Assembly (NCBI RefSeq): GCF_028641065.1
Contig: NW_026576170.1
Coordinates: 62,001 to 126,000, forward strand
DNA: 64,000 bases
Reading direction: 5' to 3'
Source: Leucoraja erinacea
Lineage: Eukaryota
The notes under the pieces are model-generated. The model did no database searches. It was not told the DNA's origin and was given only the letters and a program-made list of their open reading frames with translations. Position 1 is the stretch's first letter, and each line of letters starts with the position of its first letter. The position numbers were made by a program, and so were the translations under genes. Below are positions 12,844 to 58,302 of this stretch, piece after piece.

Positions 12844-12882
12844 TGTTTTTGTACAGGCTCAGCACCGCGCCGAGACGCCGTG
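12844..12882 (-). promoter_or_regulatory. 23-RSS of V1
   Basis: Heptamer CACGGCG (12882-12876), 23-nt spacer, nonamer ACAAAAACA (12852-12844). Confidence 0.9.
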
Positions 12883-13448
12883 GGGCTCAGGGCGCAGTAA
12901 TACGCTGCAGAGTCTTCCAGTTGTGCTTCAGACACAGTCAATATGACGATCCGCCCCGAATCATCAAGAGAGGTTGAAAAGTGTTGATCCGGTGAATTGT
13001 CCTGGCTTGAGCTGTACTTGCTTATCCAGAGCATAAGTTCCATGGGTCCACCGGGATATTGACGGTACCAGTACAGATACGGAACCTGTGTGCTCGTGGC
13101 TGTGTAGTTACAGCGTAACTCAACGGCGCCACCTTCGCTTACTGCGGTTGCAGCCGATGTCTGTGAAACGGAATCCCCCCGACAATACCCTGCAGGAGGC
13201 CGGAACGGCATTAAATCAGACAATATCGCTGTGCCGCCCGTATACTGAATAATATCCTGATTCTTAAATTCCTATGTATCTAAGGAGTATCACAGTCGAG
13301 TATGAGCCCACATCAATGGACAACAAGGCCCCATATCCGCTGAATTCTAGTTTGGATCCAGCCAACAGACACAATACCTCCTGATTCTCTCGTAATGTGA
13401 ATGAAATAGTCCATGGGGACTTTAGTATCACCCCTCATCTGACTGAGG

Positions 13449-13484
<36 letters not shown>

Positions 13485-13616
13485 TGTGTTCTGGAATAAA
13501 GACCGATTTAATAAAATATCAACTGCGGATGCGAAGCGCAGACGCGTGTAACACGCGAACTTACCGATTAAGAAAGCGGCTGATAGGAAAATAGAACACG
13601 AATGAAATGTCAACAT
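12883..13616 (-). CDS. TCR alpha/delta variable gene segment V1: leader exon 13565-13616, intron 13190-13564, V exon 12883-13189
   Basis: Spliced product MLTFHSCSIFLSAAFLIG|YCRGDSVSQ...VELRCNY...YLYWYRQYPG...LEDSAAYYCALS has the conserved Cys, WYRQ and DSAxYYC motifs. The intron is phase 1 with GTAAGT/CCTGCAG sites, and a 23-RSS follows directly. Alpha versus delta usage cannot be decided from sequence. Confidence 0.93.
13450..13488. repeat. (GT)n microsatellite in the V1 intron
   Basis: Read directly. Confidence 0.95.
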
Positions 13617-14289
13617 GCTTGCTGAGAGTTGTTTGCGCCAGGGATTTGAACCGCCAGCGATGTCCATCGTATTTGTTTTATCACGGATGTGCGGGGAAAG
13701 AGTCACCTTCCGCCTCTGATTTGGGTAAATGCGGATATAGGTGGTACGTGACACCCAATCGTCTCTGCGGAAAATTGTTCTCGATTCCACCAACCAGCTA
13801 GCAGCTGTGCGTGTTTCACACGTTGACTCGAGGCATGTTTCCGAGCTGGGAAAGGGAACGGGGAAAGATTCAGTCCCGATGCAAGTCGCGCCGGTTTCAC
13901 GAACAATTGTTTGGAACCAAGAGGGAGAAATATGAGGAGACCGCGTGGCACACGATACAAAGACTGCCACCAGTTGTGTTCAAACACGGTTACCGAGGGA
14001 GATTAAAATCCACGTGCTCTTTGCAACATGGGTTTAGTTCAAGTCCTCTCAGTGTCCCTAATTTAAGTAATCGGTGCATCTTTCCTTCGTGGGTCTGGAC
14101 TATTACCCAGTCTTAAACAATAATTGTCGATAAAGAGGCATTGAATTGAATGTACACAAAAATGCTGGAGACACTCAGCGGGTGCAGCAGCATCTATGGA
14201 GCGAAGGCGATAGGCAACGTTTCGGGCCGAAACCCTTCTTCAGACATTGAATTGAATGTAACTGCCCTGGGCAGAACATCCGTAAGTCA

Positions 14290-14304
14290 CCACTAGAGGG
14301 CAGC
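14290..14304 (+). promoter_or_regulatory. Putative CTCF-binding element upstream of V1
   Basis: CCACTAGAGGGCAGC matches the CTCF core consensus CCASYAGRKGGCRS almost perfectly. Confidence 0.7.
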
Positions 14305-14710: not shown

Positions 14711-14782
14711 GGCGCGGTGGCCAAGTGGCAAGGCGTCGGTCTCGTAAACCGAAGATCGCGGGTTCAAATCCCGTCCGCGCCT
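14711..14782 (+). tRNA. TRT-CGT: tRNA-Thr, anticodon CGT
   Basis: 72-nt cloverleaf: acceptor stem GGCGCGG/CCGCGCC, anticodon arm TCGGT-CTCGTAA-ACCGA, A box TGGCCAAGTGG, B box GGTTCAAATCC. Confidence 0.95.
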
Positions 14783-15352: not shown

Positions 15353-15656
15353 NNNNNNNNNNNNNNNNNNNNNNNNNNNNNNNNNNNNNNNNNNNNNNNN
15401 NNNNNNNNNNNNNNNNNNNNNNNNNNNNNNNNNNNNNNNNNNNNNNNNNNNNNNNNNNNNNNNNNNNNNNNNNNNNNNNNNNNNNNNNNNNNNNNNNNNN
15501 NNNNNNNNNNNNNNNNNNNNNNNNNNNNNNNNNNNNNNNNNNNNNNNNNNNNNNNNNNNNNNNNNNNNNNNNNNNNNNNNNNNNNNNNNNNNNNNNNNNN
15601 NNNNNNNNNNNNNNNNNNNNNNNNNCCTCACATCTTCTTACCCCCAGCCATCTCTT

Positions 15657-15704
<48 letters not shown>

Positions 15705-15971
15705 CCTCCCACTCTGTCTCTCCCCNNNNNNNNNNNNNNNNNNNNNNNNNNNNNNNNNNNNNNNNNNNNNNNNNNNNNNNNNNNNNNNNNNNNNNNNNNN
15801 NNNNNNNNNNNNNNNNNNNNNNNNNNNNNNNNNNNNNNNNNNNNNNNNNNNNNNNNNNNNNNNNNNNNNNNNNNNNNNNNNNNNNNNNNNNNNNNNNNNN
15901 NNNNNNNNNNNNNNNNNNNNNNNNNNNNNNNNNNNNNNNNNNNNNNNNNNNNNNNNNNNNNNNNNNNNNNN
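15353..15971. other. Two assembly gaps (15353-15625, 15726-15971) flanking (CT)n repeats
   Basis: Runs of N. Confidence 0.99.
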
Positions 15972-17043: not shown

Positions 17044-17236
17044 TCTTGAAAGCATCCAGAAAATTGGGCTCCACTGCCTTCTGAGGCAGACAATTCCACA
17101 TATTCACAACTCCGTGCGCGAGAAAAGAGTCCTCGTCACCGTTCTAAATGACTTGCCCCTTATTCTCAAATTGTGCCACTGGTTCTGGACTTCCCCAACA
17201 TCGGGAACGCGTTTCCTGCCTCGAGCGTGTCCAAAC

Positions 17237-19460
17237 CTTTGAGGGTATGAGACGTGAATTGGCCAAGATTGACTGGCAATTAATTCTAAAAGGGTTGACG
17301 GTGGATATGCAACGGAAGACATTTAAAGACTGCATGGATGAACTACAAATATTGTTCATCCCAGTTTGGCAAAATAATAAATCAGGGAAGGTAGTACATC
17401 CGTGGATAACAAGGGAAATCAGGGATAGTATCAAAGCGAAGGATGATGCGTACAAATTAGCCAGAAAAAGCAGCATACCGGAGGACTGGGAGAAATTCAG
17501 AGACCAGCAGAGGAGGACAAAGGGCTTAATTAGGAAAGGAAAAATAGATTATGAAATAAAACTGGCAGGGAACATAAAAACTGACTGCAAACGTTTTTAT
17601 AGATATGTGAAAAGAAAGAGATTAGTTAAAACAAATGTAGGTCCCTTGCAGTCAGAAACAGGTGAGTTGATCATGGGGAACAAGGATATGGCGGACCAAT
17701 TGAATAACTACTTTGGTTCCGTCTTCACTAAGGAAGACATAAATAATTTGCCGGAAATAACAGGGGACCGCGGTTCCAGGCTAATCCAGGTTAGCCGGGA
17801 AGTGGTGTTGGGTAAATTGAATGGATTAAAGGCCGATAAATCCCCAGGGCCAGATAGGCTGCATCCCAGAGTACTTAAGGAAGTAGCTCCAGAAATAGTG
17901 GATGCATTAGTAATAATCATTCAAAACTCTTTAGATTCTGGAGTAGTTCCTGAGGATTGGCGGGTAGCAAACGTAACCCAACTTTTTAAGAAGGGAGGGA
18001 GAGAGAAAACGGGGAATTACAGACCAGTTAGTTTAACATCGGTAGTGGGGAAACTGCTAGAGTCAGTTATTAAAGATGGGATAGCAGCACATTTGGAAAG
18101 TGGTGAAATCATTGGACGAAGTCAGCATGGATTTACGAAAGGTAAATCATGTCTGACGAATCTTATAGAATTTTTCGAGGATGTAACTAGTAGCGTGGAT
18201 AGGGGAGAACCAGTGGATGTGGTGTATCTGGACTTCCAGAAGGCTTTTGACAAGGTCCCACATAAGAGATTAGTATACAAATTTAAAGCAAACGGCATTG
18301 GGGTTTCAGTATTGATGTGGATAGAGAACTGGCTGGCAAGCAGGAAGCAAAGCGTAGGGGTAAACGGGTCTTTTTCACAATGGCAGGCAGTGACTAGTGG
18401 GGTACCGCAAGGCTCAGTGCTGGGACCCCAGCTATTTACAATATATATTAATGATCTGGATGAGGGAATTGAAGGCAATATCTCCAAGTTTGCGGATGAC
18501 ACTAAGCTGGGGGGGGGGGGGGGGGGGCAGTGTTAGCTGTGAGGAGGATGCTAGGAGACTGCAAGGTGACTTGGATAGGCTGAGTGAGTGGGCAAATGTT
18601 TGGCAGATGCAGTATAATGTGGATAAATGTGAGGTTATCCTTTTTGTTGGCAAAAACGGGAAAGCAGACTATTATCTAAATGGTGCCCGATTGGGAAAGG
18701 GGGAGATGCAGCGAGACCTGGGTGTCATGGTACACCAGTCATTGAAGGTAGGCATGCAGTAAAGAAAGCGAATGGTATGTTAGCTTTCATTGCAAAAGGA
18801 TTTGAGTATAGGAGCAGAGAGGTTCTACTGCAGTTGTACAGGGTCTTGGTGAGACCACACCTGGAGTATTGCGTACGGTTTTGGTCTCAAAATCTGAGGA
18901 AGGACATTATTGCCATAGAGGGAGTGCAGAGAAGGTTCACCAGACTGATTCCTGGGATGTCAGGACTGTCTTATGAAGAAAGACTGGATAGACTTGGTTT
19001 ATACTCTCTAGAATTTAGGAGATTGAGAGCGGATCTTATAGGAACTTACAAAATTCTTAAGGGGTTGTACAGGCTAGATGCAGGAAGATTGTTCCCGATG
19101 TTGGGGAAGTCCAGGACAAGGGGTCACAATAGTCAATAGTCAATAGTCAATTTAATTGTCAACAGCTTAAGGATCAGGGGGAAATCCTTTAAAACCGAGA
19201 TGAGAAGAACTTTTTTCACACAGAGAGTGGTGAATCTCTGGAACTCTCTGCCACAGAGGGTAGTTGAGGCCAGTTCATTGGCTATATTTAAGAGGGAGTT
19301 AGATGTGGCCCTTGTGGCTAAAGGGGATCAGAGGGTATGGAGAGAAGGCAGGTACGGGATACTTAGTTGGATGATCAGCCATGATCATATTGAATGGCGG
19401 TGCAGGCTCGAAAGGCCGAATGGCCTACTCCTACACCTAATTTCTATGTTTCTATTTTTC
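17237..19460 (+). mobile_element. CR1 LINE with a long open RT fragment
   Basis: ORF to 18536 with [27 protein letters not shown] and FADD motifs; frame broken at a G19 run (18509-18527); 3' tail near 19450. Confidence 0.95.
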
Positions 19461-22319: not shown

Positions 22320-24961
22320 CTATTTGAGCCATTTCCTAATTTCTTTCAAGGGGGATTGAATCGCATTTTTCAACTGCTCTCTGAATTTGGTCTGCGTCCC
22401 TGCATAAATGCAGGAGTTGGTGCAGGAACTGAGAAGCTCCAACATGTATCCGCTCTCCTGTAGAATAAACCTTGGGTCATTGGAATTGGAGCCGCTGGCA
22501 TAGTTATTGCTGGTAAATTGCACATATAGAAAATTGACAACATATGTCAACCGCAACAGGAGAAAACTGCCCGAGATTGCCATGAGTAAAATGATGGACT
22601 TTCGCCTGCTCTCCATCTCTGGGTCCCTCTGTTTGGGACCAGTGCTCTGGGCCCTGAGCCTCCTGCGAACTCCACTGGCTGATAGAATGTGCCTGACTGT
22701 CAGAATATTGAGCAGGAAAATCGAAACGAAGGGGAAAAAGGGATTTATAATGCGGTCAAACCAGTCAGAAACCCTCCATGCAATCGAAGTATAATATACA
22801 TCTTTTATGGTGCAGTACCAGGGCACATCGTCAATGATGTAGGCAGGCTCGTATACAAAGTAGGTTGGGACGTTTTTCAAACAACCCACCACACAGATTG
22901 CGCACACGACGATATTCGCGATTCTCTCGCGGCAATACCTAAGTTTCAGTCCCTGGCAACAAATGGCGATGAAGCGATCGAATGTGAATGCGACCGTCAG
23001 CCAAGAGGACGTGTCCTTGGACGCCCAGCTCAGGACAATAACGAGACTGCAACCCGGAGTGACGGAGAGCAAGCTGACTGGAAAATATATCGCTCGAAGT
23101 CGGCTTAATATCACAGCGTTAATAATAACCAGGAAATCCGTCACTGCCATGAACACCAGGTAGCGTGTGATGCATTTGGAGAGACCACATCCTCCGAGGG
23201 ACAGGATGACTATCGTTACTAAGTTCGCTGTAAGAGAAAGGGAGATACTGGATCAGTCGGAATCAGGCTGCCCTCTACATCATCAGTCTACATCATCAGC
23301 GTATTGAGGAAACGGGAAAATTTATTTTCCCAATTAATCTTTACAATGCAATACAATACAATATTCATTGTTATTTGAACCGCAGTAGGCTTAAACGAAA
23401 TTCTGTTTCTACAGCCATACAAACAAAACAACGATTCCTACTCGACGCACAACCAATTCACACAAACATCCATCACAGTGAACCTCTTCCCCACTGTGGT
23501 GGAAGGTAAAGTCTTTTCTTTCCCCAGCTCTCCATTTTTCTCCCGATGTTGAAGCCCGCTGTAATCTTAATGCTATTGGAATGCCTAAATGGATATCAAT
23601 GTGCGGTTTGAGCTGATTATGCCAGTTGAACTCGCGAATGTTAAACAAAGATCTTGATTGCCCGCTTCAAGGGTCCAAACTGGTAAAAGTTCCCTAGAAT
23701 GACCCACCGAGTCCACGGGGAACATCGCTCTCCCGTTCACTCGAGTTCTGTTATCACACTGCCAAGGGGCAATTTATCGTCTGAAAGAATGAAAAAGAAC
23801 GAATGAGTTTATTAGCCAAGTATTCACATACAAGGAATTTGCCTTGGTGCTCCGACCGCAAGTGACAACATACAGTGACCTAGGAATGACACATAAAACA
23901 TTAAACATTAATATTAAAATGTATCGATTAAACATGTGAATTAAATAAAATACCAGAACAAAAGGAGGCTACAGATTTTTGGTTATTGAGTCGTGGAAAA
24001 AAAATCTGTTTTTTATTTCTGGGTGTGGCAGCGTTGACAGTCCGGAGTCGCCTTCCAGAGGTAAGTGATTCAAAGCGTCTGTGTATATCTATACACTGTA
24101 ATTTGCTCGATTGCAATAATATATTGTCTTACTGCTGACTGGGTGGCATAAAAAAACACAAGCTTTTCACTATACCTCGGCACACGTGACAGTAAACAAA
24201 ATTGTAAATTGCAAACTGTAAACTGTATAAGGAAGCAAAAGCATTCTGGTTTAAAAACTGCATCATATCAATCTGAACATTCCGTGTTGATGTTATATTC
24301 CCACATGCCTAATTATTCATCGTGGTAAATAATTTGTTACATACCCGTGCAAAAGTTACACCAGAAAATAAACATTAAGGTAGATTAGTATGTGGGACAC
24401 CGCAGCAAACGTTTGTGGATGGATAACCAGAAGTTGCATCGGTCGGACAGGATGAGCATGTGTAATTAGCTTAATATCCTCAGTCGATAAATCAATTTTA
24501 AGTGATAGCACCGAAGCACGTTTTAAATTGTAAGCAGATTACTATCAGTGATGTTCTCACTTGCCCAGAGAACGTCGATATTCCAGTCAAAAGTGTAATC
24601 AAACGTAATTTCAAACAAAAGATGAGACAAGAAATATACGCGATTTCATTGCACAGGCCAATATTATAGAACACGTTATTTTTGAATCAATATTAACAAC
24701 CTCCCCTTGCAAGTAATTTGGTCAAATTAATATTTACTTTCAATCTCACAAAACAGCGGAGATCTGGGGCCGTATTTTCTTTGCACCGTAAGAAAACTGA
24801 AATAAAATGACCACCAATTAGTAATAAGCAATTGCTGCGCGGCGTAACCGGCAGAGTCACTGTCCGTTGTTAACAGGTACTGGTGCCTTACCTGGAACAC
24901 CGAACGATGCAAGGAGAGAATAGTAAATTGCAAAGACCGGCCCATTTCCAGGAGCGTGCAT
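22320..24961 (-). CDS. GPR139/GPR142-like class A GPCR G1, join(24892-24961, 22320-23227), 325 aa
   Basis: Exon 1 MHAPGNGPVFAIYYSLLASFGVP ends at a GTAAGG donor; exon 2 starts ANLVTI after TTACAG. Seven hydrophobic segments with WLTVAFTFDRFIAIC, DPEMESRRKS and SSCTNSCIY motifs; no internal stops. Confidence 0.92.
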
Positions 24962-32600: not shown

Positions 32601-33810
32601 ACATGAGGGGGAACTTCTTTACTCGGAGCGTGGTAGCTGTGAGGAATTAGCTTCCAGTGGAAGTGGTGGAGGCAGTTTCGATTTTATAATTTACAAATAA
32701 ATTGGATAGGTATATGGACGGGAAAGGAATGGAGGGTTATGGTCTGAGTGCAGGTAGATGGGACTAGGGCAAAATAAGTGTTCGGCACGGACTAGAAGGG
32801 CCGAGATGGCCTGTTTCCGTGCTGTAATTGTTATATGTTATACGTTATATGTTATATGTTATATGTTATATTAATATCCCGGTCTCTCCCTCTGTTCTGC
32901 AGCGAATTTGGTGACGATTGCGATTCTATCCAAAGGAAGATGCGGCCTCTCCAAATGTATCACTCGCTACCTGGTATCCATGGCGGTGATGGATTTCCTG
33001 GTCATCATCACCGCCGTGATCCTAAGCCGGCTTCGGGCTATTTATTTCCCGAACACAGTCCTGTCTACCATTCCGACCTGCAAGGTCCTTATTGTCCTCA
33101 GCTGGATTTCAAAAGACGCTTCCGTCTGGTTGACGGTCGCTTTCACGTTCGATCGGTTCATCGCCATTTGCTGTCAGAAACTGAAACTAATATATTGCAC
33201 TGAGAAAATCGCGGCGGGTGTTATTGCAACGGTCTGCGCGTTAGGCTGTTTGAAGAACGCCCCATTTTATTTTATATATGAGCCAGTCTACATAATTGAT
33301 AATATACCCTGGTTCTGTACCATAAAAGATTCATACTACACTTCAATTGCATGGATAGTGTACGATTGTCTACACCGCGTTTTGAACCCATGCCTCCCGT
33401 TCCTACTAATTCTGTTGCTCAATGTTGTGACGGTCAGACACATTCTAGCTGCCAGCGCAGCCCGCAAGAGGCTCCGGGCCCAGACCAACGGTGGAAAACA
33501 AAGTGACCCGGAAATGGAGAGTCGGCGGAAGTCGATCATTCTACTCATGGCGATCTCGGGCAGTTTTATGCTGTTGCGATTGACCTACGTCGCAAACTTC
33601 CTCTTTGTGCAAATTACAAGCAGCGGTTATGCAACCCGTTCCAATTCCAACGACCCCAGGTTTATTCTCCAAGAAAGTGGATACATGCTGGAGATACTAA
33701 GTTCTTGCACCAACTCGTGCATTTACGGGGGGACACAGACTAAGTTTAGAGAGCAGCTGCAGGAAGTGGTTAAGTATCCTTTCTATCTAATTCGCAAGCG
33801 GTTAAAATAG
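29650..33810 (+). CDS. GPR139/GPR142-like class A GPCR G2, join(29650-29719, 32903-33810), 325 aa
   Basis: Exon 1 MHAPGNGPVFAIYYSALAAFGVP with GTGAAG donor; CTGCAG acceptor; intact 7TM frame paralogous to G1. Confidence 0.92.
29867..30172. mobile_element. Harbinger-type MITE in the G2 intron
   Basis: Terminal inverted repeats AGGGCCTGTTCCAC..GGTAATTCAAGAG / CTCTTGAATTACC..GTGGGACAGGCCCT. Confidence 0.75.
30498..30950 (+). mobile_element. CR1 3' end in the G2 intron
   Basis: Shared CR1 3' sequence. Confidence 0.85.
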
Positions 33811-35783: not shown

Positions 35784-35821
<38 letters not shown>

Positions 35822-39157: not shown

Positions 39158-41910
39158 TTACTTGATTTTCTTAATCAAGTTGAAAGGGTATGTGACCGCA
39201 TTTTTCAACTGCTCTCTGAATTTGGTCTGCGTCCCCGCATAAATGCACGAATTGGTGCAGGAACTGAGAAGCTCTAGCATATATCCGCTTTCTTGAAGAA
39301 TAAACCTCGGGTCAGTGGAATTGGAACTGTTGGCATAGTTGTTGCTCGAAAACTGCACAAACAGAAAGTTGACAACGAACGTCAGGCGCAGCAACAGGAA
39401 ACTACCCGAGATGGCGAAGAGTAAAATGATGGACTTCCTCCTGCTCTCCATCTCTGGATCTCTCTGGTTGTCTCCATTGCTCTGGGCCCGGAGCCTCTTG
39501 CGGGCTCCACTGGCCGCCAAGATGTGTCTCACTGTCAGAGCGTTAAGTAACAAAATCAGAAGGAAAGGGAGACATGGGTTTAATATACGATGCAGCCAGT
39601 CATAAACTCGCCAGGAAGTTGAAGTATAATAGATTTCTTTTATGCTGCAATACCAGGGCACCTTATCGATAATATACACGGGCTCATAAACAAAGTAGAG
39701 CGGTATGTTTTTGAAACAGACAAGGGCGCAGATTACTCCAATAACTGCAGCCGCCGTTTTCTCCGTACAATAACCGTGTTTCAGTCGCTGGCAGCAAATG
39801 GCGATGAACCGATCGAAGGTGAACGCGACAGTTAGCCAGACGGACGTGTCTTTGCAAGCCCAGCTGACTGCAATAACGACACTGCAGGCGGGATTTGTTG
39901 CCAAGAAACTAAGCGGGAAATAAATTGGTCGCAGCCGGGTCAATATCACGGCTGCGAGAATGACCAGGAGATCCGTCACCGCCATGAACACCAGGTAGCG
40001 AGTAATGCATTTGGAAAGGCCGCATCTTCCCTGGGAGAGAATCACGATCGTCACCATATTGGCTGTGAAACAAACAAAAATACGATGGAGTTATTCATCA
40101 TAATTCCGGCCGCGTCCCCAGTTTTTATCGGAACGTAGAAACGAAATGCGATCCTGGTGAAATTTGCTGTGGTTGAAAAATAATACTCGCGAGGCTTTTT
40201 GCGCCGCCCCCCCCCCCCCCACATCTCTTTTTCAGCTTCCTCTTCCCCCGACAATCAGATGAAAGAAGAGTCCTGACACGAGACTTTCGCCCCTCCACGT
40301 CCTTCATAGACGCTGCCTGACCCGTTTATCAGTTAAAATGACCACACCGAATGGAAACGTTGCCACATAGCTTAACTTAGTAGTATTTGGTTTTAAATGT
40401 TTATGGTTTAGAACGGAAGAAATGGAGAAAACATGTAATTAATATTAAATTAGGAAAATGCATACATTCCAAAGCAAACAGTGGAACCTGACTCAGGTAA
40501 CCAATGACAAACATGAATAACATTCTCTGGTGATAATAGACCAACCTAATAGTTGCCTACATTTGCCATGACCTATCGAGGCACAAGATAAAAACCTATG
40601 CCCCTGTCCCACTTAGGAAACATCTGGAGACTTTGCGCCCCACCCAATGTTTCCGTGCGGTTCCCGGAGGTTTCCGGAGGTTTTTTGTCAGTCTACCTGC
40701 TTCCACTACTTGCAACCTCCGGCAACCACCTGCAACCTCCGGGATCTTGCAAACAGCCCCGAACATTGAAGCGTTCTCCATTGTCATCCTGACACTTTTC
40801 TATTTGCACTTTCTCTGTCTATGCAACACTATATTCTGCACTCTGCTATTTTGTTTTCCTGAGCACTAACTATTTATTGTACACTTGAACGATATGAGTT
40901 GCCTGCATATCATTGCATCACAAATTATTCCACTGTATCTCCATACACGGCAATAATATACATATACCTATAATATATCAATACCAGTAAATGTTTCCCT
41001 GCATCTCGGTAAACGCGACAATGCACTAAACTCAAATACTGATACCGATTAAGTTACTTTCCTTTCGATGTGGGGAGAGGTTGGCTTTGCCGGAGAGAAT
41101 TATCCCGTTTGGTTTGTAATGACCTCATCGGATTCTGGACGTAAATAAGTGGACCGGCTTCAGTTTAACGTCATACAGGAAAAGGAACATATGGAAGCTG
41201 CTTTGTCAAAAACAAATACAAACTGTTATTTTAAAAATGAGAAGAAGGGTCTCGACCGGAAAAGTCACATATTCCCTTTCTCCAGAGATGTTGCCTGACC
41301 GGCTAACTTACTCCAGCCTTTTGTACCAGTCTTTGGTTTAAACTAGCATCTGCAGTTCCTCCCTTCATGGACATGCGAAGTCTGATACAGAAAATTCGTT
41401 TAAAGCACGAAGACCGCATACGATGGCGGTACACAAAAAGGCTGGAGAAACTCAGCGGGTGCAGCAGCATCTCTGAAGCGAAGGGAATAGGCAATGTTTT
41501 GCCACTCAAATAAGTGCATATTCCAATGCCTGCATTTGTTACCTGCAGAAATATTCGAACGAATGTCAATCTGAAAACGGAATAGTATAAGTGAATGCAT
41601 TCTCCGTGTTGAGGCACTAGATTGTACCCATTAAAATGTTAACGCGAGCAAAGATTGGGGAATCTGGGCGTCGATTACAAAATAAGGCAGGTGAAAGGAA
41701 AATACAATTTCAAATTAACAAAGCTTTTCACTGTACGTGACAATATATAAACGTATCTAACCGTTCTAACGAGGGACCTGCAACTGGATGTAACACTGTT
41801 TAACTTCGGTTTCCGCTATGCGTTTACTGGGAAGATTTACCTGGCAAGCCAAACGCCGCAAGAGTCGTGTAATACACGGCAAAGATTGGTGCATTTCCAG
41901 GCGCGTGCAT
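39158..41910 (-). CDS. GPR139/GPR142-like class A GPCR G3, join(41841-41910, 39158-40062), 324 aa
   Basis: Exon 1 MHAPGNAPIFAVYYTTLAAFGLP with GTAAAT donor; TCACAG acceptor; intact 7TM frame. Confidence 0.92.
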
Positions 41911-45162: not shown

Positions 45163-45639
45163 ATGTGCGAGCACCGCCTCCCGATCTTTGTTCTCATGTC
45201 TCTTCTCAGTAAGGATTTTCACCCAGTAAAAATCCTGTCTTCCCACGAATGCTGTCGCCTGATTTCTGCCGATGTAAAGATAATGCTGATGCCTTGTCAA
45301 TCATGGTGATTCTGACAATTTCTATTTTCACTCAGACTGGAGCCATCAAAATGCGGTGGAACAGACCGAAGCAGAAACCACGTTTGCAGAGGGAACGGAT
45401 GTAACACTCAAGTGCCTGCTGAAAACCAGCGATTCCCTCCCATTTGTTTACTGGTACAAGCAGTGCCTTGGACATTCTCCGCAGTACCTGATTCAGGTTA
45501 TAGGATATAACGTATACAGGGCGAAGGGCATCACAGATCGATACTCTGCTACATTCAATACAACTACAAAGACGGGCGAGTTCGTGATACGTGACGGCTT
45601 GTTCTCCGATTCCGCCCTGTACATATGTGCTATGCGATA
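45163..45639 (+). CDS. TCR alpha/delta variable gene segment V2: leader exon 45163-45208, V exon 45336-45639
   Basis: MCEHRLPIFVLMSLLN|WSHQNAVEQ...VTLKC...FVYWYKQ...SDSALYICAMR. Phase-1 intron with GTAAGG donor and CTCAG acceptor; 23-RSS follows. Confidence 0.9.
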
Positions 45640-45678
45640 CACACTGGTGCAAATGTGCCGCGGGCTCGAACAAAATCC
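45640..45678 (+). promoter_or_regulatory. 23-RSS of V2
   Basis: CACACTG, 23 nt, ACAAAATCC. Confidence 0.9.
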
Positions 45679-48325: not shown

Positions 48326-48840
48326 ATGATGAGCAGTTACAGATTTATACCTAGTATTGTCGGACACCTCCTCCCGCTGTTCATTACCATGTCACTTCTC
48401 AGTAAGATATGTCTTGCCCGTAAAAAATGCTATATTGCAATGAATGTCGTAACCTAACTGTTGACAGTGGAAGGTTAATACCTATGCTGCTTCACGCAAA
48501 GACGCTAATTGTGCCATTGTCACTATTTTCTCTTAGATTCGACACATCAAAATACAGTGGAACAATCCGAAGCAGAAATTACGTTCGAAGAGGGAAGGAA
48601 TGTCACACTAAGCTGTGCTCTGAAAACCAGTGATACAACGCCTTATGTTTACTGGTACAAACAGCGCCCAGCTCACTCTCCACACTACCTGCTTCAGGTT
48701 CTGGGAAATATTGTATTAAGGAACCAGGGCGTGACCGATCGCTTCTCTGCTACGTTCAATAAAACTGCGAAGATGACCGAGTTCATGATACGCGACCCCG
48801 TGATGTCTGATTCCGCCCTGTACATCTGCGCCATGAGACG
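48326..48840 (+). CDS. TCR alpha/delta variable gene segment V3 (paralogue of V2): leader exon 48326-48401, V exon 48537-48840
   Basis: MMSSYRFIPSIVGHLLPLFITMSLLN|STHQNTVEQ...VTLSC...YVYWYKQRP...SDSALYICAMR. Phase-1 intron with GTAAGA donor and CTTAG acceptor. About two-thirds identical to V2 by hand alignment. Confidence 0.92.
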
Positions 48841-48879
48841 CACACTGTTGCAGAAATGCTGCAGGCTCGAACAAAAACC
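48841..48879 (+). promoter_or_regulatory. 23-RSS of V3
   Basis: CACACTG, 23 nt, ACAAAAACC (consensus nonamer). Confidence 0.93.
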
Positions 48880-48961
48880 AACCCTCTGTGATCCCCATGA
48901 GCGTTCGCCAGCGAGCGCTCTTAAACAAAACGGAGACATTTTGGAGAAATAGGAAGGAAAA

Positions 48962-50669: not shown

Positions 50670-51187
50670 NNNNNNNNNNNNNNNNNNNNNNNNNNNNNNN
50701 NNNNNNNNNNNNNNNNNNNNNNNNNNNNNNNNNNNNNNNNNNNNNNNNNNNNNNNNNNNNNNNNNNNNNNNNNNNNNNNNNNNNNNNNNNNNNNNNNNNN
50801 NNNNNNNNNNNNNNNNNNNNNNNNNNNNNNNNNNNNNNNNNNNNNNNNNNNNNNNNNNNNNNNNNNNNNNNNNNNNNNNNNNNNNNNNNNNNNNNNNNNN
50901 NNNNNNNNNNNNNNNNNNNNNNNNCTCACATACACATTCGCACACACACATACACACTCTCAAATACTCACACACACNNNNNNNNNNNNNNNNNNNNNNN
51001 NNNNNNNNNNNNNNNNNNNNNNNNNNNNNNNNNNNNNNNNNNNNNNNNNNNNNNNNNNNNNNNNNNNNNNNNNNNNNNNNNNNNNNNNNNNNNNNNNNNN
51101 NNNNNNNNNNNNNNNNNNNNNNNNNNNNNNNNNNNNNNNNNNNNNNNNNNNNNNNNNNNNNNNNNNNNNNNNNNNNNNNNNNNNNNN
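50670..51187. other. Two assembly gaps (50670-50924, 50978-51187) at (CA)n repeats
   Basis: Runs of N. Confidence 0.99.
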
Positions 51188-51513
51188 CCTTATACTTTGA
51201 AATGTATCAGAAACTCGTTGCGTCAAAGCCAAATAAAGGTGTTGAGTAAATGCTCCTCTGACCAACCACGCTCATATTTGTCAAAACTATAAACATAGAA
51301 AGTCGAGTTGACGGAATTTTATTTTGCAATTTCCTTCCGCTAAGATATACACTTTTATCTGTGTCCACAAAGTTTCAACAATTACTTCCAATAATGTGAC
51401 AATAATATTACAAACCCTGAAGCGCAATTGACCCGACCATTTTTAATTCTAATGTAGACTGAAAATATTATTTCCTTTATGAACCCTTCGTACAATTTTA
51501 TTTGGCTTGACTA

Positions 51514-53594
51514 TTATTTGAACCGTTGTCTAATTATGTTGAAAGGGTATTGGATAGTTGTCTTCAGCTGCTGTCTGAATTTAGTCTGAGTCCCCGCATA
51601 GATAAATGTGTTGGCGCAGGAACTGAGAAACTGCAACATATATCCGCCTTCTTGAAAGATGAACTTCGGGTCATTGGAATTAGAGGCGCTGACATAGTTA
51701 TTCGCTGAGATTTGCACAAATAGAAAATTTGCAACGTCCGTGGCCCAGAGCAGAATAAAACAGCCCGAGATGGCGAATAGCAAAATGATGGACTTTCTCC
51801 TGCTCTGCATCTCTGGGTCCCTCTGTTTCTCTCCGTTGTTCTGGGCCCGAAGTCTACCGCGTGCTCTGTTGGCGGCCAGGATATATCTGACCGTCAGCAC
51901 ATTGAGCATCAAAATCAGTAGGAAAGGAACGCATGGGTTTAACATCCGGTGCGACCATTCATACACTCTCCAAGCGACGGAAATATAAAATATTTCTTTT
52001 ATGCTGCAGAACCAGGGCACTGTATCGATAATGTACATCGGTTCAAATTCAAAATAAAACGGGACGTTTCTCAAACAGGCGAGGAAGCAAACGGTTCCAA
52101 TAACAACGGCCGCGGTTTTCTCGGTGCAATACCTCAGTTTCAGTTGTTGGCAGCAGATCGCCACACACCGATCGAAGGTGAAAGCCACCGTTAACCAAAC
52201 GGAAGCATCTTTAGCAGCGGAGCTGAGCGCAATGATTAGACTGCAACCCGGCGTGGTGGACAAGATACTAACTGGAAAATAAATCGCCCGAAGGCGGCTG
52301 AATATCACAGCCGTGACGATGACCAGGAAATCCGTCACCGCCATGAATACCAGGTACCGAGTGATGCATTTCGAGAGGCCGCACTTTCCCTGGGACAGAA
52401 TGGCAATCGTCAGGACGTTAGCTGCAAGGAAAAGAGTGGGATTATGTAAATAATATCTATCGGTGATCTCTTCATAACTGGCTTTTGGGAGCAGACGTGC
52501 AATCCCATATCGTTGCAATGAATGCAGAGCGTGAAGCGGTTATTGGTTTGATGGTTACTTGTTTCTGATATCAAATGGCCACGCGAAACCGAGCTCTACG
52601 GCCTATCGCGTGCACTACGATGGACATAATCGCGCAGTCTTATGAATTTCACTGCCTGGTATAATTTACGTGGTATGTATATTTGTGCGTGTTGCCTGTC
52701 ATGCTGTTGCAAGCACGATTTTTATGGTAACCATATAAACCATATAACAATTACAGCACGGAAACAGGCCATCTCGGCACTACAAGACCGTGCCGAACAA
52801 CTTTTTTCCCCTTAGTCCCACCTGCCTGCACTCATACCATAACCCTCCATTCCCTTCTCATCCATATGCCTATCCAATTTATTTTTAAATGATACCAAGG
52901 AACCTGCCTCCACCACTTCCACTGGAAGCTCATTCCACACCGCTATCACTCTCTGAGGAAAGAAGTTCCCCCTCATATTACCCCCAAACTTCTGTCCCTT
53001 AATTCTGAAGTCATGTCCTCTCGTTTGAATCTTCCCTATTCTCAAAGGGAAAAGCGTGTCCACATATGCTTGGTACATGTGCCTCGTCACACTTGACTTG
53101 TCTATCTTCAAACAGGACAAGGTTAATTAATAACTGAAATGACTTACAGATTAACACGGACAGGACAATTTTAAGCAAGGCATGGTAGACATATTGGAAC
53201 AGGATATGTGGAGTTTTATGGACGAATCTGAAAGCGCCAGTAAAGTATATTTGCAACAAAACTAAGACATAAGGGGAACTTCGAATCAACTATGAAAATA
53301 GGTTATGCCATAAAATAAATTATTGTAATAATGTAAAGACTGGATATAATAAGTAACGCCCTTACCAAAGCTGCCCCGTGTAAAATTCGCAGTTTTAAGA
53401 GCAACGATAAGGGACAAATTGTGGAAAATTGTGGTGTAGAACCAAAGAGTAAGGCGGCCCGAGCGGAACATATCAGCTCATCATGGACACGGTTACGTAT
53501 TTATCAACTCTGGCGAAGCTTCACCTGGAACACCGACGACTGCAAGGATTGTGTAATAAGTGGCGAAGATTGGTCCGTTTCCAGGCGCGTGCAT
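51514..53594 (-). CDS. GPR139/GPR142-like class A GPCR G4, join(53525-53594, 51514-52421), 325 aa
   Basis: Exon 1 MHAPGNGPIFATYYTILAVVGVP with GTGAAG donor; TTGCAG acceptor; intact 7TM frame that retains the TM6 Trp (FILLWAT). Confidence 0.92.
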
Positions 53595-54119
53595 CTTCCC
53601 TGATTTCGATTGCGGAGCTGCATCAGCTAAAATAAACACGAGCACACGAATATTTATGTCTTATATCATCCTCTGGGGAGCAATTAGATTGCAACATCGT
53701 CATTACTTCTTTTGATATTCCGGTTGAAGACGAAACAATCGTGTTTACAGACTTCTTCGTATCGAGTCCACATCACAAGATTAGAAAGTGTAAGCCAGGG
53801 CTGCACACGCTTCTCGGAATCTGCACACAATGGTGTCTGTCTTGCGTTTCTTGCGCGTCTTGTGCGTGGTGGTGGAAAGGTTGGTGGAAACAGGGGCGCG
53901 ACGTGAACGCCCTTTCATTGACTCCATTTTTACGATAATGAATGCAATTAAATGCACCTAATTCGACGAGCATTCTAGCCCCGGGTTGAATGGACGTCGC
54001 CGCTTCGATGCAATGTAAATAAAATGTAAGGTATATAAGGTATAAATAGTAATTAAGGCGAGTTACACGGAAACGGGACCGCCGGCGCAACGCATCAATT
54101 CCGATCAAGTCACAGTCAG

Positions 54120-56560: not shown

Positions 56561-56969
56561 CTTTTAAAAACATCCCACTTGGCCGATGTTCCTTTCCCTC
56601 AAATAACATGCTCCAGTCAACTACAAGTATTCTTTGTTCAAGTTTTTTTAAAGGCTGTAGTTGCTCTAGTTCGCCCAGCAACACGTGTGAGCTGGTTCCA
56701 TGAACCAATAGCCCGCTGTTTGCAACGGTTGCCCTCCGATGCATTTTACATATTTCCCTTCCCACCGTTATCTCTCACCTCTTGTCTTCGGCACTCGACT
56801 CTTGTACAAATTATATCATCATCCGCCTTAACTGAGTTTGGAAATGGCCATCTATTCAAGAGGGATCAGCAATCGTGTAGCAAAGATGACAGCCCAAGGA
56901 GGCTGTTCGCAAATATATATAATTTGTTCTCCATAGCTCTGTTTAAATAAAAACATACAAACTTCATTA

Positions 56970-57690
56970 TGAATGAATGAATGTATAAATAGGTTTATTG
57001 GCCAAGTATTCACATACAAGGAATTTGTCTTGGTGCTCCGCCCGCAAGTGACAACGACATACAATGACAGTTAGGAATGACACATAAAACATTAAACATT
57101 AATAAAAACAACACATTATTGATTAAATATGTTAATTAAATAAAACACCAGAGCAAAAGGAGGCTACAGGTTTTTGATTATTGAGTAGAGCTACTACTCG
57201 TGGAAAAAAAAGTTGTTTTTATGTCTGGCTGTGGCAGCTTTGACAGTCCGGAGTCGCCTTCCAGAGAGAAGTGATTCGCAGAGGTTGTGGTAAGGGTGAG
57301 AGGGGTCAGAAATGATCTTACCCGCTCGCTCCCCTGCCCTTGCAGTGTACAGTTCATCAATGGAGGGAAGGTTGCTGCCAATAGCCTTCTCAGCTGATCG
57401 GACGATTCGCTGCGGCCTCCAGATGTCGCGCCAAACCAGACCATGATGGTTAAGGTGGGAACATACACTACGATGGTCGTATAGAATTGGACCATCATTA
57501 CCGGTGGCAGAGTGTGCTTCATCAGTGCCGCAGGAAGTACATACTGTGTTGTGCATTTTTGACCGTGGAGTCGATGGTAGCCCCCCATTTAGAGTCCTTG
57601 GAGATGATGGTTCACAGGAACTTAAAATACTCCACATATGTGACTGTGCTGTTGTTGATGGTGAGTGGGGTGAGGGGAGGGGGACCTCTC
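56970..57690 (-). mobile_element. Rex1/Babar-type LINE 3' end; shorter copy at about 23800-24070
   Basis: QRIVRSAEKAIGSNLPSIDELYTARA...DPSHP...LLSGRRLR and a (TTCA)n tail. Confidence 0.8.
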
Positions 57691-57963
57691 CAAAAGTCTA
57701 AATAGGCGTGAGGTATTTCGAAAGCTGCGCCGCTCTGTTGAATCAACAACTGCGTACAACGTTGCTTTTTGCTATTAAGTCGTGAACTTTCGTGGTACAC
57801 ATGTTAAAGTTTGCTGTTAGTGCAATATTTTGACGGAATGGAGATATCATGTGGAGCGAGTGGCGTTTCCGCTTACAGCAAATGATTTCCGGCGCCACTG
57901 CCTGCGCCACAATAAGCTACATAGCTGAACATCTGCAGCTGATGTGCCTCAGAAACCTGCAGC

Positions 57964-58002
57964 AGTTATTGTACGAGTCTGCACGCCGTTCCCAACACTG
58001 TG
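57964..58002 (-). promoter_or_regulatory. 23-RSS of V4
   Basis: Consensus heptamer CACAGTG, 23 nt, ACAATAACT. Confidence 0.88.
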
Positions 58003-58302
58003 CGACTGCACAGTAATACATCGCCGTGTCAGACAGCCGTAGTACCGAAATAGTCATCTGATATGTTTTCGTTGACTGCTGAATTTCGTCAGAAAACCGC
58101 TCACGAGCGAAATCCGCCTTCTGGTCATACCGTCCGTCAGTGTATCTCCGGAGCAGAAACTCCGGGTGACCGTTGGGGTACTGGCGGTACCAGAACAAGT
58201 TGTAACCATCCTTGGCAAAGGTGCATGTTAAAATGGCGTTTTCCCCCTCTGTATGTGTCAGAGAAGTCTTCTCTTGGGTCACGGAATCAGCATCACCCCG
58301 AC
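58003..58302 (-). CDS. TCR alpha/delta variable gene segment V4, V exon only (no intact leader exon found; possibly ORF or pseudogene)
   Basis: Acceptor TTGCAG, then RGDADSVTQE...AILTCTF...NLFWYRQYP...LSDTAMYYCAV with an open frame, followed by a 23-RSS. Confidence 0.88.

What the first reader, a model, noticed from the sequence alone, without database searches (positions are those of the whole stretch)
12844..58302. Intact orphan GPCR gene family interleaved with TCR alpha/delta V segments
Seen: the order is V1(-), tRNA, G1(-), G2(+), G3(-), V2(+), V3(+), G4(-), V4(-). All four GPCR genes are full length, share the same two-exon layout and have no stops, despite heavy transposon traffic around them, which suggests purifying selection. 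Known: olfactory receptor genes are interspersed with distal TRAV genes in mammals, and GPR139/GPR142 sense aromatic amino acids and peptides. Inference: this lineage has a different, expanded GPCR family co-duplicating inside its TCRA/D V array. It could be a chemosensory-like repertoire or a T-cell metabolite/peptide sensor. I cannot tell whether this arrangement has already been described.
Basis: partly seen in the sequence, partly recalled or inferred. Interest (0 to 1): 0.8.

Follow-up and report, generated by a model that had tools for sequence, protein, structure and literature searches.

The report
Orphan receptor genes among skate TCR V segments
In little-skate-like DNA, four intact genes of a large, apparently undescribed shark-and-ray receptor family (mislabelled GPR139) lie between four T-cell-receptor V segments, much as smell-receptor genes lie among mammalian TCR alpha V genes, but I found no sign that the two gene kinds were copied together or work together.

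Summary
The window has exactly four class-A GPCR genes (G1-G4) and four RSS-bearing TCR alpha/delta-type V segments, in the stated order, plus an intact tRNA-Thr gene. Every GPCR has the same layout: a 70-nt ATG exon, a phase-1 GT..AG intron and a ~905-nt exon, giving 324-325 codons. The N gaps sit in intergenic (CT)n/(CA)n repeats. G3-V2-V3 and G4-V4 each lie on gap-free sequence.

- **Genome and family:** it is Leucoraja erinacea-like (G4 is 100% identical to an annotated protein). The GPCRs belong to a very large elasmobranch family that NCBI auto-names "probable GPR139". GPR139 is the nearest solved relative, but only at about 22-25% identity.
- **Selection:** G1-G4 are old paralogues (dS 1.1-1.4) under strong purifying selection (dN/dS 0.10-0.17). 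Related skates show 15 synonymous against 2 non-synonymous differences in G3.
- **Co-duplication:** not seen here. GPCR similarity stops at the exon edges, and the only V duplication (V2/V3, dS 0.67) carries no GPCR.

This scan has already noted the same arrangement on at least six other pieces of this genome.

The parts
12844..13616 (-). V1: TCR alpha/delta-type V segment. Leader candidate 13616-13565 (52 nt, phase 1). V exon 13189-12883 (...YYCALS). RSS 12882-12844 = CACGGCG-23-ACAAAAACA.
   Evidence: ORF and Pfam V-set E 6.6e-15; sequence read; leader and RSS coordinates. The heptamer keeps CAC but differs from the consensus at positions 4 and 6.
14711..14782 (+). Intact tRNA-Thr(CGU) gene
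   Evidence: ARAGORN; Rfam RF00005, 71.3 bits against a gathering score of 29.
22320..24961 (-). G1: two-exon GPR139-related GPCR gene. Exon 1 24961-24892, intron 1664 nt, exon 2 23227-22320. 325 codons.
   Evidence: (7tm_1 E 2e-11 on the partial ORF). 98% identical to the L. erinacea protein P0009.
29650..33810 (+). G2: two-exon GPCR gene. Exon 1 29650-29719, intron 3183 nt, exon 2 32903-33810. 325 codons. Head-to-head with G1; the two start codons are 4.7 kb apart.
   Evidence: (7tm_1 E 2.8e-15). Near-identical to the Logan-derived protein P0020.
39158..41910 (-). G3: two-exon GPCR gene. Exon 1 41910-41841, intron 1778 nt, exon 2 40062-39158. 324 codons.
   Evidence: (7tm_1 E 1.7e-15). 99% identical to the Amblyraja radiata protein P0001. 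Differences listed in related DNA runs are 15 synonymous and 2 non-synonymous.
45163..45678 (+). V2: V segment. Leader 45163-45208 (46 nt, phase 1). V exon 45336-45639 (...YICAMR). RSS 45640-45678 = CACACTG-23-ACAAAATCC.
   Evidence: The nearest solved chains are TCR alpha and V-delta-1.
48329..48879 (+). V3: tandem paralogue of V2. Leader candidate 48329-48401 (73 nt; ATT stands where V2 has its ATG). V exon 48537-48840. RSS 48841-48879 = CACACTG-23-ACAAAAACC.
   Evidence: V2/V3 similarity covers 44969-45722 against 48167-48923 at 70.5%; dS 0.67, dN/dS 0.32.
51514..53594 (-). G4: two-exon GPCR gene. Exon 1 53594-53525, intron 1103 nt, exon 2 52421-51514. 325 codons. It keeps Trp at the TM6 toggle position, where G1-G3 have Arg.
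   Evidence: (7tm_1 E 2.5e-16). 100% identical over exon 2 to the L. erinacea protein P0011, which is on record on a 169,644-bp scaffold.
57964..59607 (-). V4: V segment. V exon 58302-58003 (...YYCAVA). RSS 58002-57964 = CACAGTG-23-ACAATAACT. Leader candidate 59607-59562 (46 nt, phase 1), about 1.26 kb upstream across TE debris.
   Evidence: No acceptable leader lies within 450 nt.
17148..18536 (+). LINE reverse-transcriptase remnant, one example of the retroelement debris that fills the intergenic space and introns
   Evidence: Pfam RVT_1 E 5.7e-27. All other long self-matches in the window are repeats of this kind.
15353..15971 (.). Two assembly gaps (15353-15625, 15726-15971) in a (CT)n microsatellite, between the tRNA and G1
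50670..51187 (.). Two assembly gaps (50670-50924, 50978-51187) in a (CA)n microsatellite, 327 bp past G4's stop codon, between V3 and G4

Best explanation
The window is a piece of the V-gene array of a skate TCR alpha/delta-type locus (Leucoraja erinacea or a very close relative). Four independent, intact genes of a GPR139-related class-A GPCR family have come to lie between the V segments.

Shown:
- Each receptor gene is a self-contained unit with its own ATG exon, canonical splice sites and stop codon.
- The four are old paralogues kept by purifying selection.
- They belong to one subfamily that multiplied in batoids, inside a family that is hugely expanded in sharks, skates and rays. Its nearest non-elasmobranch relatives found here are a salamander lineage that shares its motifs and a more distant coelacanth/teleost lineage.
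- Sequence variation is concentrated in the extracellular-facing half (top of TM3, the ECL2 hairpin, top of TM6 through ECL3 to TM7). The G-protein side (ICL1/TM2, the DRF region, ICL3 start, TM7/helix 8) is nearly invariant.

Inferred:
- The interleaving is the passive product of birth-and-death duplication and retroelement-driven shuffling in a duplication-prone region. The known parallel is the olfactory-receptor genes between the distal TRAV genes of mammals. It is not a functional coupling.
- V(D)J joining of a distal V would delete or invert the receptor genes lying in between on that chromosome in that T cell, as a side effect.
- The receptors work as ordinary G-protein-coupled sensors whose pocket has diversified for different small ligands (amino acids or short peptides would fit the GPR139 kinship, the 8-residue N terminus and the peptide-receptor-like ECL2 hairpin).
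- My estimate of their use: a chemosensory-type repertoire about 40%; brain or endocrine receptors like GPR139 about 25%; immune-cell receptors about 10%; something else for the rest.
For: - **Gene anatomy:**
- **Class-A identity:** Pfam 7tm_1 at 44-60 bits against a cut-off of 30.5. An AlphaFold model of the natural homologue P0002 has 7 TM helices plus helix 8 and an ECL2 hairpin, pLDDT 80.5, and matches class-A peptide receptors and GPR139 at TM 0.67-0.75.
- **Closest solved relative:** GPR139 at E 1e-16 (64 bits). The next hits (CCR2, PrRP receptor, GPR15, TRH receptor) are at about 1e-9.
- **Family size:** 2192 proteins at E<=1e-3, and all named proteins among the best 120 are from elasmobranchs. 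There are 108 clusters at 50% identity with E<=1e-30.
- **Outgroups:** salamander P0345 and coelacanth P0360 at 34% identity.
- **Selection:** dN/dS 0.10-0.17 at dS 1.1-1.4. In related DNA runs the listed differences in G3 exon 2 are 15 synonymous and 2 non-synonymous.
- **Old, separate lineages:**
- **No shared flanks between GPCR copies:**
- **Outer-half variability:** entropy 1.26 against 0.76 bits, p 1e-8, across 121 sequences; 0.87 against 0.64, p 0.001, in the subfamily.
- **V segments:**
- **Mammalian parallel:** OR10G2 and OR4E2 in human, and Olfr1507-1509 in mouse, lie between TRAV1 and TRAV2 (PMC4574546).
Against: - There is no expression evidence of any kind. The only runs holding the sequence cover intron and intergenic DNA, so they behave as DNA.
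- 'Passive neighbour' is an argument from absence of evidence for coupling.
- The V array's physical link to J and C segments is not visible in the window. G4's annotated protein is on record on an unplaced 169,644-bp scaffold, so 'inside the TCR alpha/delta locus' rests on the V type and on an untested neighbouring note of a NAR-TCR cassette.
- Higher variability on the extracellular side is common to most GPCR families and does not by itself show a repertoire function.
Confidence: 0.72

Rival explanations
1. Functional coupling: the receptors are T-lineage genes that use the chromatin or enhancers of the TCR alpha/delta locus. They would act as metabolite or peptide sensors of T cells, or V(D)J joining would give T-cell clones different receptor sets.
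For: Only position. Four genes lie between RSS-bearing V segments, and the same arrangement is noted on several other pieces of this genome (AI notes).
Against: - Each gene has its own start exon, and the orientations are mixed: G1-, G2+, G3-, G4-.
- The paralogues are far older than the local V duplication.
- Other family members sit beside unrelated genes.
- Mammalian OR genes in the same kind of position are not T-cell genes (established knowledge; arrangement in PMC4574546).
- No RNA data either way.
Confidence: 0.08
2. The V segments are orphons, or a decaying outlying V cluster not used by the functional TCR alpha/delta locus, so the window is simply a GPCR cluster with relic V genes.
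For: - There is no J or C in the window.
- The matching annotated protein is on record on an unplaced 169,644-bp scaffold.
- V1's heptamer is CACGGCG.
- V3 has lost the leader ATG that V2 uses.
- V4's leader is 1.26 kb away across TE debris.
Against: - All four V exons are open, with Cys23, Trp41 and Cys104 and a 23-spaced RSS that keeps CAC and an A-rich nonamer.
- V2/V3 have dN/dS 0.32.
Confidence: 0.1
3. Assembly artefact: scaffolding across microsatellite gaps, or collapsed or duplicated haplotigs, falsely brought the GPCR and V blocks together.
For: - Four N gaps lie in simple repeats.
- G1 is only 98% identical to an L. erinacea protein on another scaffold (208,695 bp), while G4 is 100% identical to one on a 169,644-bp scaffold. 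That hints at haplotigs or very recent segmental copies.
Against: - G3 (39-42 kb), V2 (45 kb) and V3 (48 kb) share one gap-free block, and G4 and V4 share another.
- Short contigs from independent DNA runs bridge the exon 2/intron boundary of G3.
- The arrangement recurs on other pieces (AI notes).
Confidence: 0.03

Closest known systems
GPR139 (human, solved structures 7VUG/9M42), with GPR142 as its paralogue (from my own knowledge)
   Same: - It is the best solved match by a wide margin: profile E 1e-16 against about 1e-9 for the next receptors.
- It has the highest sequence identity among structural neighbours, 21-22%.
- Both have a very short N terminus, and TM1 is alike ('YYS.L...G.PAN..T..ILS').
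- Both share the 'S.W.TV..T.DR' block in TM3.
- Both lack the proline of NPxxY (GPR139 'NFFLY'; here 'NSCIY'/'NTFIY').
   Different: - Identity is only about 22-25%. The single-sequence match is E 1e-6 and covers just TM1-TM5.
- The skate genes are one of hundreds of paralogues, not a conserved single-copy gene.
- At GPR139's TM6 'LWAP', G1-G3 have 'LRLT' and G4 has 'LWAT', so the proline is absent and in G1-G3 the tryptophan is Arg.
Olfactory-receptor genes interspersed among distal TRAV genes of mammals (human OR10G2 and OR4E2; mouse Olfr1507-1509; also sheep)
   Same: Intact class-A GPCR genes of a multigene family lie between functional TCR alpha/delta V segments and would be deleted when distal V segments rearrange (PMC4574546).
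   Different: - The GPCR family is different: Pfam 7tm_1 only, and the nearest relative is GPR139, not an OR.
- Mammals have two or three ORs at the 5' edge of the locus. Here there are four receptors to four V segments within 47 kb, and by the scan's notes the same occurs on many pieces of this genome.
Lineage-expanded vertebrate chemoreceptor families (OR, TAAR)
   Same: Large clustered family, a compact gene with nearly the whole coding region in one exon, lineage-specific expansions, and variability biased to the ligand side.
   Different: There is no evidence of expression in sensory neurons. The window holds no pseudogenes, and selection is strongly purifying rather than showing rapid turnover.
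NCBI 'probable G-protein coupled receptor 139' models of elasmobranchs (Leucoraja, Amblyraja, Pristis, Heterodontus, Heptranchias and others)
   Same: G4, G1 and G3 are 100%, 98% and 99% identical to such models, so the genes themselves are already in public annotation.
   Different: The name comes from automatic best-hit labelling. I found no paper describing the family or its position among V segments, in eight full-text searches and in the 2025 paper on elasmobranch TCR alpha/delta linkage (PMC12227049).

Membership tests
Class A (rhodopsin-like) GPCR | Match to Pfam 7tm_1 above the curated cut-off | tested here: met
   44.3, 56.9, 57.7 and 60.4 bits for G1-G4 exon 2, against a cut-off of 30.5.
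Class A (rhodopsin-like) GPCR | Seven TM helices plus helix 8 | tested here: met
   AlphaFold model of the natural homologue P0002 (75% identical to G3): pLDDT 80.5, pTM 0.80, 7 TM helices, helix 8 and an ECL2 hairpin. Foldseek hits are all class-A receptors. The window's own joined two-exon proteins were not folded.
Class A (rhodopsin-like) GPCR | Hallmark residues: N1.50, D2.50, the C3.25-ECL2 cysteine pair, D/E-R-Y, CWxP, NPxxY | tested here: inconclusive
   Present: N ('ANLV'), D ('AVTD'), both cysteines, and DRF (DRC in G4). Altered: NPxxY is NSCIY or NTFIY, and CWxP is absent (LRLT in G1-G3, LWAT in G4). Some other subfamilies keep NPFIY.
GPR139 proper (orthologue) | Orthologue-level identity to vertebrate GPR139 | tested here: not met
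   21-25% identity. phmmer E 1e-6 over TM1-TM5 only; profile E 1e-16; 22% in the structural alignment.
GPR139 proper (orthologue) | Single conserved gene per genome | tested here: not met
   Four paralogues in 31 kb. 2192 related proteins in the 90% cluster database, with dozens per species.
GPR139 proper (orthologue) | Activation by aromatic amino acids or peptides | not testable with these tools
   Needs receptor expression and ligand assays.
GPR139-related clade (wider kinship) | GPR139 is the nearest characterised receptor, by a clear margin | tested here: met
   64 bits against 41 or fewer for all other solved GPCRs. Shared TM1 motif, short N terminus and loss of P7.50.
Germline TCR alpha/delta V gene segment | V-set domain with Cys23, Trp41 and Cys104 in an open V exon | tested here: met
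   All four segments.
Germline TCR alpha/delta V gene segment | Heptamer-23-nonamer RSS directly after the V exon | tested here: met
   V2 CACACTG-23-ACAAAATCC; V3 CACACTG-23-ACAAAAACC; V4 CACAGTG-23-ACAATAACT; V1 CACGGCG-23-ACAAAAACA, where the heptamer is weaker.
Germline TCR alpha/delta V gene segment | Split leader: short hydrophobic L exon, phase-1 intron | tested here: inconclusive
   There are candidates for all four (46-73 nt, phase 1). V2's is clean. V3 needs an upstream ATG, V1's intron is 375 nt, and V4's is about 1.26 kb with TE debris. No transcript confirms any of them.
Germline TCR alpha/delta V gene segment | Closest to TRAV/TRDV rather than Ig or TRB/TRG V | tested here: met
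   V2's best solved matches are TCR alpha chains and V-delta-1. For the profile of the four V segments, nearly all specifically named hits read 'T-cell receptor alpha/delta variable' or 'alpha chain V region'. For V1 and V4 alone the PDB ranking was swamped by multi-domain scFv chains.
Germline TCR alpha/delta V gene segment | Physical linkage to TRAJ/TRAC or TRDD/TRDJ/TRDC, and use in rearranged transcripts | not testable with these tools
No J or C in the window. Flanks cannot be read.
Chemosensory receptor repertoire (as a kind) | Large lineage-specific clustered expansion with variation biased to the ligand side | tested here: met
Chemosensory receptor repertoire (as a kind) | Expression in chemosensory cells | not testable with these tools
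   No RNA run holds the sequence. X1-X4 cover introns and intergenic DNA.
Olfactory receptor (OR) family | Membership of the OR family (Pfam 7tm_4 type) | tested here: not met
   Only 7tm_1, plus a weak sub-threshold Srx match. The nearest relative is GPR139.

The most novel reading that the evidence does not exclude
The GPR139-related family is the 'missing' odorant/amino-acid receptor repertoire of elasmobranchs, animals known for very few OR and TAAR genes. The subfamily embedded in the TCR alpha/delta V array would then mirror, on a larger scale, the ancient OR-TRAV neighbourhood of mammals. That could hint that chemoreceptor clusters and antigen-receptor V arrays share a chromatin environment suited to stochastic, one-of-many gene choice. 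The Arg/Lys at the TM6 toggle position in the G1-G3 subclade would mark a functionally shifted ligand class.
Probability: 0.25. Interest if true: 0.85.

Novelty: new variant of a known kind. Interest (0 to 1): 0.5.

Why it matters
If these receptors turn out to be sensory, sharks, skates and rays would gain a large, previously overlooked chemoreceptor family. That bears on the long-standing puzzle of how animals famed for smell manage with so few classical odorant receptors.

Independently of function, the arrangement shows that a GPCR multigene family has become interspersed with TCR alpha/delta V segments in a lineage other than mammals. It involves a different GPCR family and, in this window, one receptor gene per V segment. 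This is useful for two questions: how V arrays grow and tolerate foreign genes, and what V(D)J deletion removes along with the V segments.

As it stands it is a well-documented gene arrangement with no demonstrated functional link. The genes themselves are already in public annotation under a misleading name.

Tried and rejected
1. **Cross-species synteny.** Not testable.
2. **Chromosome-level co-location through V proteins.** V2 alone found one Logan protein. The four-V profile found mostly teleost TCR alpha/delta V proteins and no elasmobranch chromosome records.
3. **Mis-fused gene models as a proxy for adjacency.** Ten long family members had no V-set domain. Hemopexin, Na-channel, integrin and uromodulin-like domains appeared instead.
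4. **Expression.** No run is on record as RNA. The four runs that hold G3 also cover intron and intergenic DNA, and no exon 1-exon 2 joint was seen. All the many listed 'joints' fall at repeat edges.
5. **Classifying V1 and V4 by PDB.** The ranking was dominated by multi-domain scFv and diabody chains, so it was uninformative.
6. **tblastx of the upstream regions.** It mostly returned retroelement noise, but it did reveal the shared exon 1.
7. **Co-duplication units.** None in the self-comparison.
8. **J segments, extra V segments or GPCR pseudogenes.** None.
9. **Protein Atlas.** It could not take the window's sequence. With homologue P0007 it only confirmed many 'probable GPR139' clusters.
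11. **Joined proteins.** I did not search or fold the joined two-exon proteins of the window. Exon 2 alone and natural annotated homologues were used instead.


Full report
**What is there**

The window holds four long open frames with a rhodopsin-family 7TM signature (Pfam 7tm_1, 44-60 bits against a cut-off of 30.5). It also holds four V-set frames ending in Y(Y/I)C and one tRNA-Thr(CGU) gene (ARAGORN; Rfam 71.3 bits). A motif scan finds exactly four V-like segments and no J-like FGxG motif. tblastn finds exactly four GPCR copies and no fragments.

**GPCR gene structure**

Each long frame opens just after a polypyrimidine tract and AG. A short conserved frame, MHAPGNGP(V/I)FA.YY....(F/V)G(V/L)P, lies 1.1-3.2 kb upstream of each.

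Exact coordinates:

| Gene | Exon 1 | Exon 2 |
|---|---|---|
| G1 | 24961-24892 | 23227-22320 |
| G2 | 29650-29719 | 32903-33810 |
| G3 | 41910-41841 | 40062-39158 |
| G4 | 53594-53525 | 52421-51514 |

- In all four, exon 1 is 70 nt from the ATG.
- The donor is GTAAGG, GTGAAG, GTAAAT or GTGAAG.
- The intron is phase 1, the split codon reads Ala, and the total is 324-325 codons.
- Exon 1 encodes an 8-residue N terminus and most of TM1. Exon 2 starts at the conserved Asn of TM1.
Exon 2 alone and natural annotated homologues were used.

**V segments**

| Segment | V exon | RSS | Leader candidate |
|---|---|---|---|
| V1 | 13189-12883 | CACGGCG-23-ACAAAAACA, ending at 12844 | 13616-13565 |
| V2 | 45336-45639 | CACACTG-23-ACAAAATCC | 45163-45208 |
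| V3 | 48537-48840 | CACACTG-23-ACAAAAACC | 48329-48401 |
| V4 | 58302-58003 | CACAGTG-23-ACAATAACT | 59607-59562 |

- Sources.
- V3 has ATT where V2 has its ATG, so its candidate leader starts at an upstream in-frame ATG.
- V4's leader candidate lies about 1.26 kb upstream, across retroelement debris.
- V2's nearest solved chains are TCR alpha chains and V-delta-1.
- A profile of the four V segments hits mainly proteins that sources name 'T-cell receptor alpha/delta variable' or 'alpha chain V region'.
- PDB ranking for V1 and V4 alone was swamped by multi-domain scFv chains.
- An array of V segments with 23-RSS and no nearby J or C fits a translocon-type TCR locus, not the cluster-type Ig loci of cartilaginous fish (established knowledge).
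- Linkage to J and C cannot be seen in the window.

**Gaps**

The four N runs are flanked by (CT)n or (CA)n and are intergenic. I did not try to fill them. Continuity across them is unknown. G1, G2, G3, V2 and V3 share one uninterrupted block (15972-50669), and G4 and V4 share another (51188-64000). The interleaving therefore does not depend on the gaps.

**Whose genome, and which family**

- G4's exon 2 is 100% identical to a Leucoraja erinacea protein (P0011, on record on a 169,644-bp scaffold).
- G1 is 98% identical to another L. erinacea protein (P0009, 208,695-bp scaffold).
- G3 is 99% identical to an Amblyraja radiata protein (P0001).
- G2 matches a Logan-derived protein.
- All are auto-named 'probable G-protein coupled receptor 139'.
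- The word search found 2192 related proteins. All named proteins among the best 120 come from sharks, skates and rays, often dozens per species and on several chromosomes.
- The exhaustive search found 108 clusters at 50% identity with E<=1e-30.
- Beyond elasmobranchs, the nearest full-length relatives are at 34% identity: a salamander group (Pleurodeles, Ambystoma, Lissotriton), which keeps the family's WLTVAFTFDR and DPEM motifs, and a Latimeria protein (P0360). A similar teleost protein (P0382) is at 29%.
- The Latimeria protein is itself only E 2e-18 from human GPR139, so it is not its orthologue.
- Rooted on Latimeria plus teleost, the salamander sequence branches first, then the divergent elasmobranch lineages, then the core family. 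The long branches make this order tentative.

**Relation to GPR139**

- A 26-sequence family profile hits GPR139 at E 1e-16 (64 bits) over its full length. The next solved receptors (CCR2, PrRP receptor, GPR15, TRH receptor, CCR5) are near 1e-9.
- The single sequence gives only E 1e-6 over TM1-TM5.
- An AlphaFold model of the natural homologue P0002 (pLDDT 80.5) has 7 TM helices, helix 8 and a beta-hairpin ECL2.
- Its structural neighbours are class-A peptide receptors (NTSR1, opioid, somatostatin, galanin, CCK) and GPR139. GPR139 has the highest sequence identity among them, 21-22%.
- Shared with GPR139: the very short N terminus, the TM1 motif, the TM3 block, and loss of the NPxxY proline.
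- The family is therefore GPR139-related, but G1-G4 are not GPR139.

**Age and selection**

- Pairwise, G1-G4 are 67-75% identical in protein, with dS 1.1-1.4 (saturated) and dN/dS 0.10-0.17.
- In trees of 121 and 58 sequences, they fall in one strongly supported subfamily (support 100).
- That subfamily has shark members at its base (Heterodontus, Stegostoma, Scyliorhinus) and a batoid-only expansion.
- G4 groups with a sawfish protein. G1, G2 and G3 are separate lineages in a skate+sawfish subclade. These duplications therefore predate the skate/sawfish split.
- DNA-type runs of two coded related organisms cover G3. The differences listed in exon 2 are 7 synonymous and 2 non-synonymous in one, and 8 synonymous and 0 non-synonymous in the other. 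The list is partial.
- The genes are thus kept by purifying selection on both long and short time scales.

**Co-duplication**

A self-comparison of the window shows GPCR-GPCR similarity (73-77% nt) confined to exon 2, give or take about 15 bp. There is no shared intron or flank and no repeated V+G unit. The only V-V similarity is V2/V3: about 755 bp covering promoter, leader, intron, V exon and RSS, at 70.5% identity, dS 0.67. It contains no GPCR. Everything else repeated is retroelement debris (RVT_1). Within this window, then, the two families did not duplicate together. Very old co-duplication cannot be excluded.

**How the receptors probably work**

Conservation is highest on the cytoplasmic side: GRCGLSKCITRYLV.MAVTD, SVWLTVAFTFDRFIAICC, DPEMESRRKSI.LL, and TM7/helix 8. 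It is lowest at the top of TM3, in TM4, in ECL2, and from the top of TM6 through ECL3.

| Comparison | Outer half | Inner half | p |
|---|---|---|---|
| Entropy, 121 family sequences | 1.26 bits | 0.76 bits | 1e-8 |
| Entropy, subfamily | 0.87 bits | 0.64 bits | 0.001 |
| Variable sites among G1-G4 | 51% | 37% | - |

They fit a common signalling core with a diversified ligand pocket, though such a bias is common in GPCR families.

One unusual point concerns the column aligned with the Trp of GPR139's TM6 'LWAP', the toggle position. There, G1, G2, G3 and the rest of the skate+sawfish subclade that contains them have Arg or Lys. G4 and the shark and ray members keep Trp. Family-wide the counts are W 83, Y 24, R 13, K 1.

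**What could not be settled**

- **Expression.** No run on record as RNA holds the sequence. The four holders cover introns and intergenic DNA, so they behave as DNA.
- **Synteny in other species.** V-gene proteins of elasmobranchs are not in the protein database with chromosome records. Ten mis-fused family gene models carried no V-set domain but various unrelated neighbours, which shows that the family as a whole sits in many neighbourhoods.
- **Literature.** Eight full-text searches, plus a reading of the 2025 paper on elasmobranch TCR alpha/delta linkage, found no description of the family or of the arrangement. The library is limited to open papers, so this does not prove it is undescribed.

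**Comparison with the known**

The closest known arrangement is the olfactory-receptor genes between TRAV1 and TRAV2 of human, mouse and sheep (PMC4574546). The skate case uses a different GPCR family and, here, one receptor gene per V segment. This scan's earlier notes record the same interleaving on at least six other pieces of this genome and in the window that begins 617 bases after this one. It is therefore a property of a large region, not of this window alone. Those notes are AI readings. I re-derived independently the gene structure, the family placement, the selection figures and the loop-biased divergence.

**Verdict**

It is a real and apparently undescribed variant of a known kind of arrangement. 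Its functional meaning is open.

Noticed in passing
window 22320-23227, 32903-33810, 39158-40062 (TM6, codon 225 of exon 2 in G3 numbering): G1, G2, G3 and the rest of the skate+sawfish subclade that contains them carry Arg or Lys at the column aligned with the toggle-switch Trp of GPR139's TM6 'LWAP'. G4 and the shark and ray members of the subfamily keep Trp. Across 121 family sequences the counts are W 83, Y 24, R 13, K 1. A charged residue conserved deep in the pocket suggests a shifted ligand class or activation mode.
   Followed up: partly
window 14711-14782 (+): An intact tRNA-Thr(CGU) gene (Rfam 71.3 bits) lies between V1 and G1. No T-run terminator follows within about 100 nt.
   Followed up: partly
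window 58303-59561: V4's probable leader intron is about 1.26 kb and holds retroelement fragments, against 127-375 nt for V1-V3. If V4 is used, its splicing has to cross this debris.
   Followed up: partly
window 48329-48401 and 45163-45208: V3 has ATT where its paralogue V2 has the leader ATG. An upstream in-frame ATG would give a 24-residue leader. V2 also has an extra Cys straight after WYKQ in FR2.
   Followed up: no
window 12876-12882: V1's RSS heptamer is CACGGCG (CAC kept, positions 4 and 6 off consensus), with a near-perfect nonamer ACAAAAACA. It may be a weaker recombination substrate.
   Followed up: no
window 22320-24961 (G1) against protein P0009: G1 is 98% identical, not 100%, to an L. 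erinacea protein on a 208,695-bp scaffold, while G4 is 100% identical to one on a 169,644-bp scaffold. The G1 region may exist as a haplotig or a very recent segmental copy, and all L. erinacea members of this subfamily lie on small unplaced scaffolds.
   Followed up: partly
proteins P0345 (Pleurodeles), P0393 (Ambystoma), P0396 (Lissotriton), P0360 (Latimeria), P0382 (Odontesthes): Outside elasmobranchs, the nearest full-length relatives found include a salamander lineage (34% identity) that keeps the family's motifs and a coelacanth/teleost lineage (34%/29%), all auto-named GPR139. The family therefore seems older than cartilaginous fish and was expanded only there.
   Followed up: partly
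proteins P0254, P0307, P0328, P0352 (other genomes): Mis-fused gene models join family GPCRs to hemopexin, voltage-gated Na-channel, integrin-alpha and uromodulin-like domains. This gives a cheap read-out that family members lie in many unrelated neighbourhoods.
   Followed up: no
window 4266-5369: A strongly C/T-biased low-complexity stretch (GC 0.58, GC skew -0.62) gives long spurious Pro/Ser/Leu and Gly/Glu/Arg frames on the two strands. It is a degenerate internal repeat, not a gene.
   Followed up: no
window 24892-29719: G1 and G2 are head-to-head with 4.7 kb between their start codons, so they could share a bidirectional regulatory region. The interval is mostly retroelement debris.
   Followed up: no
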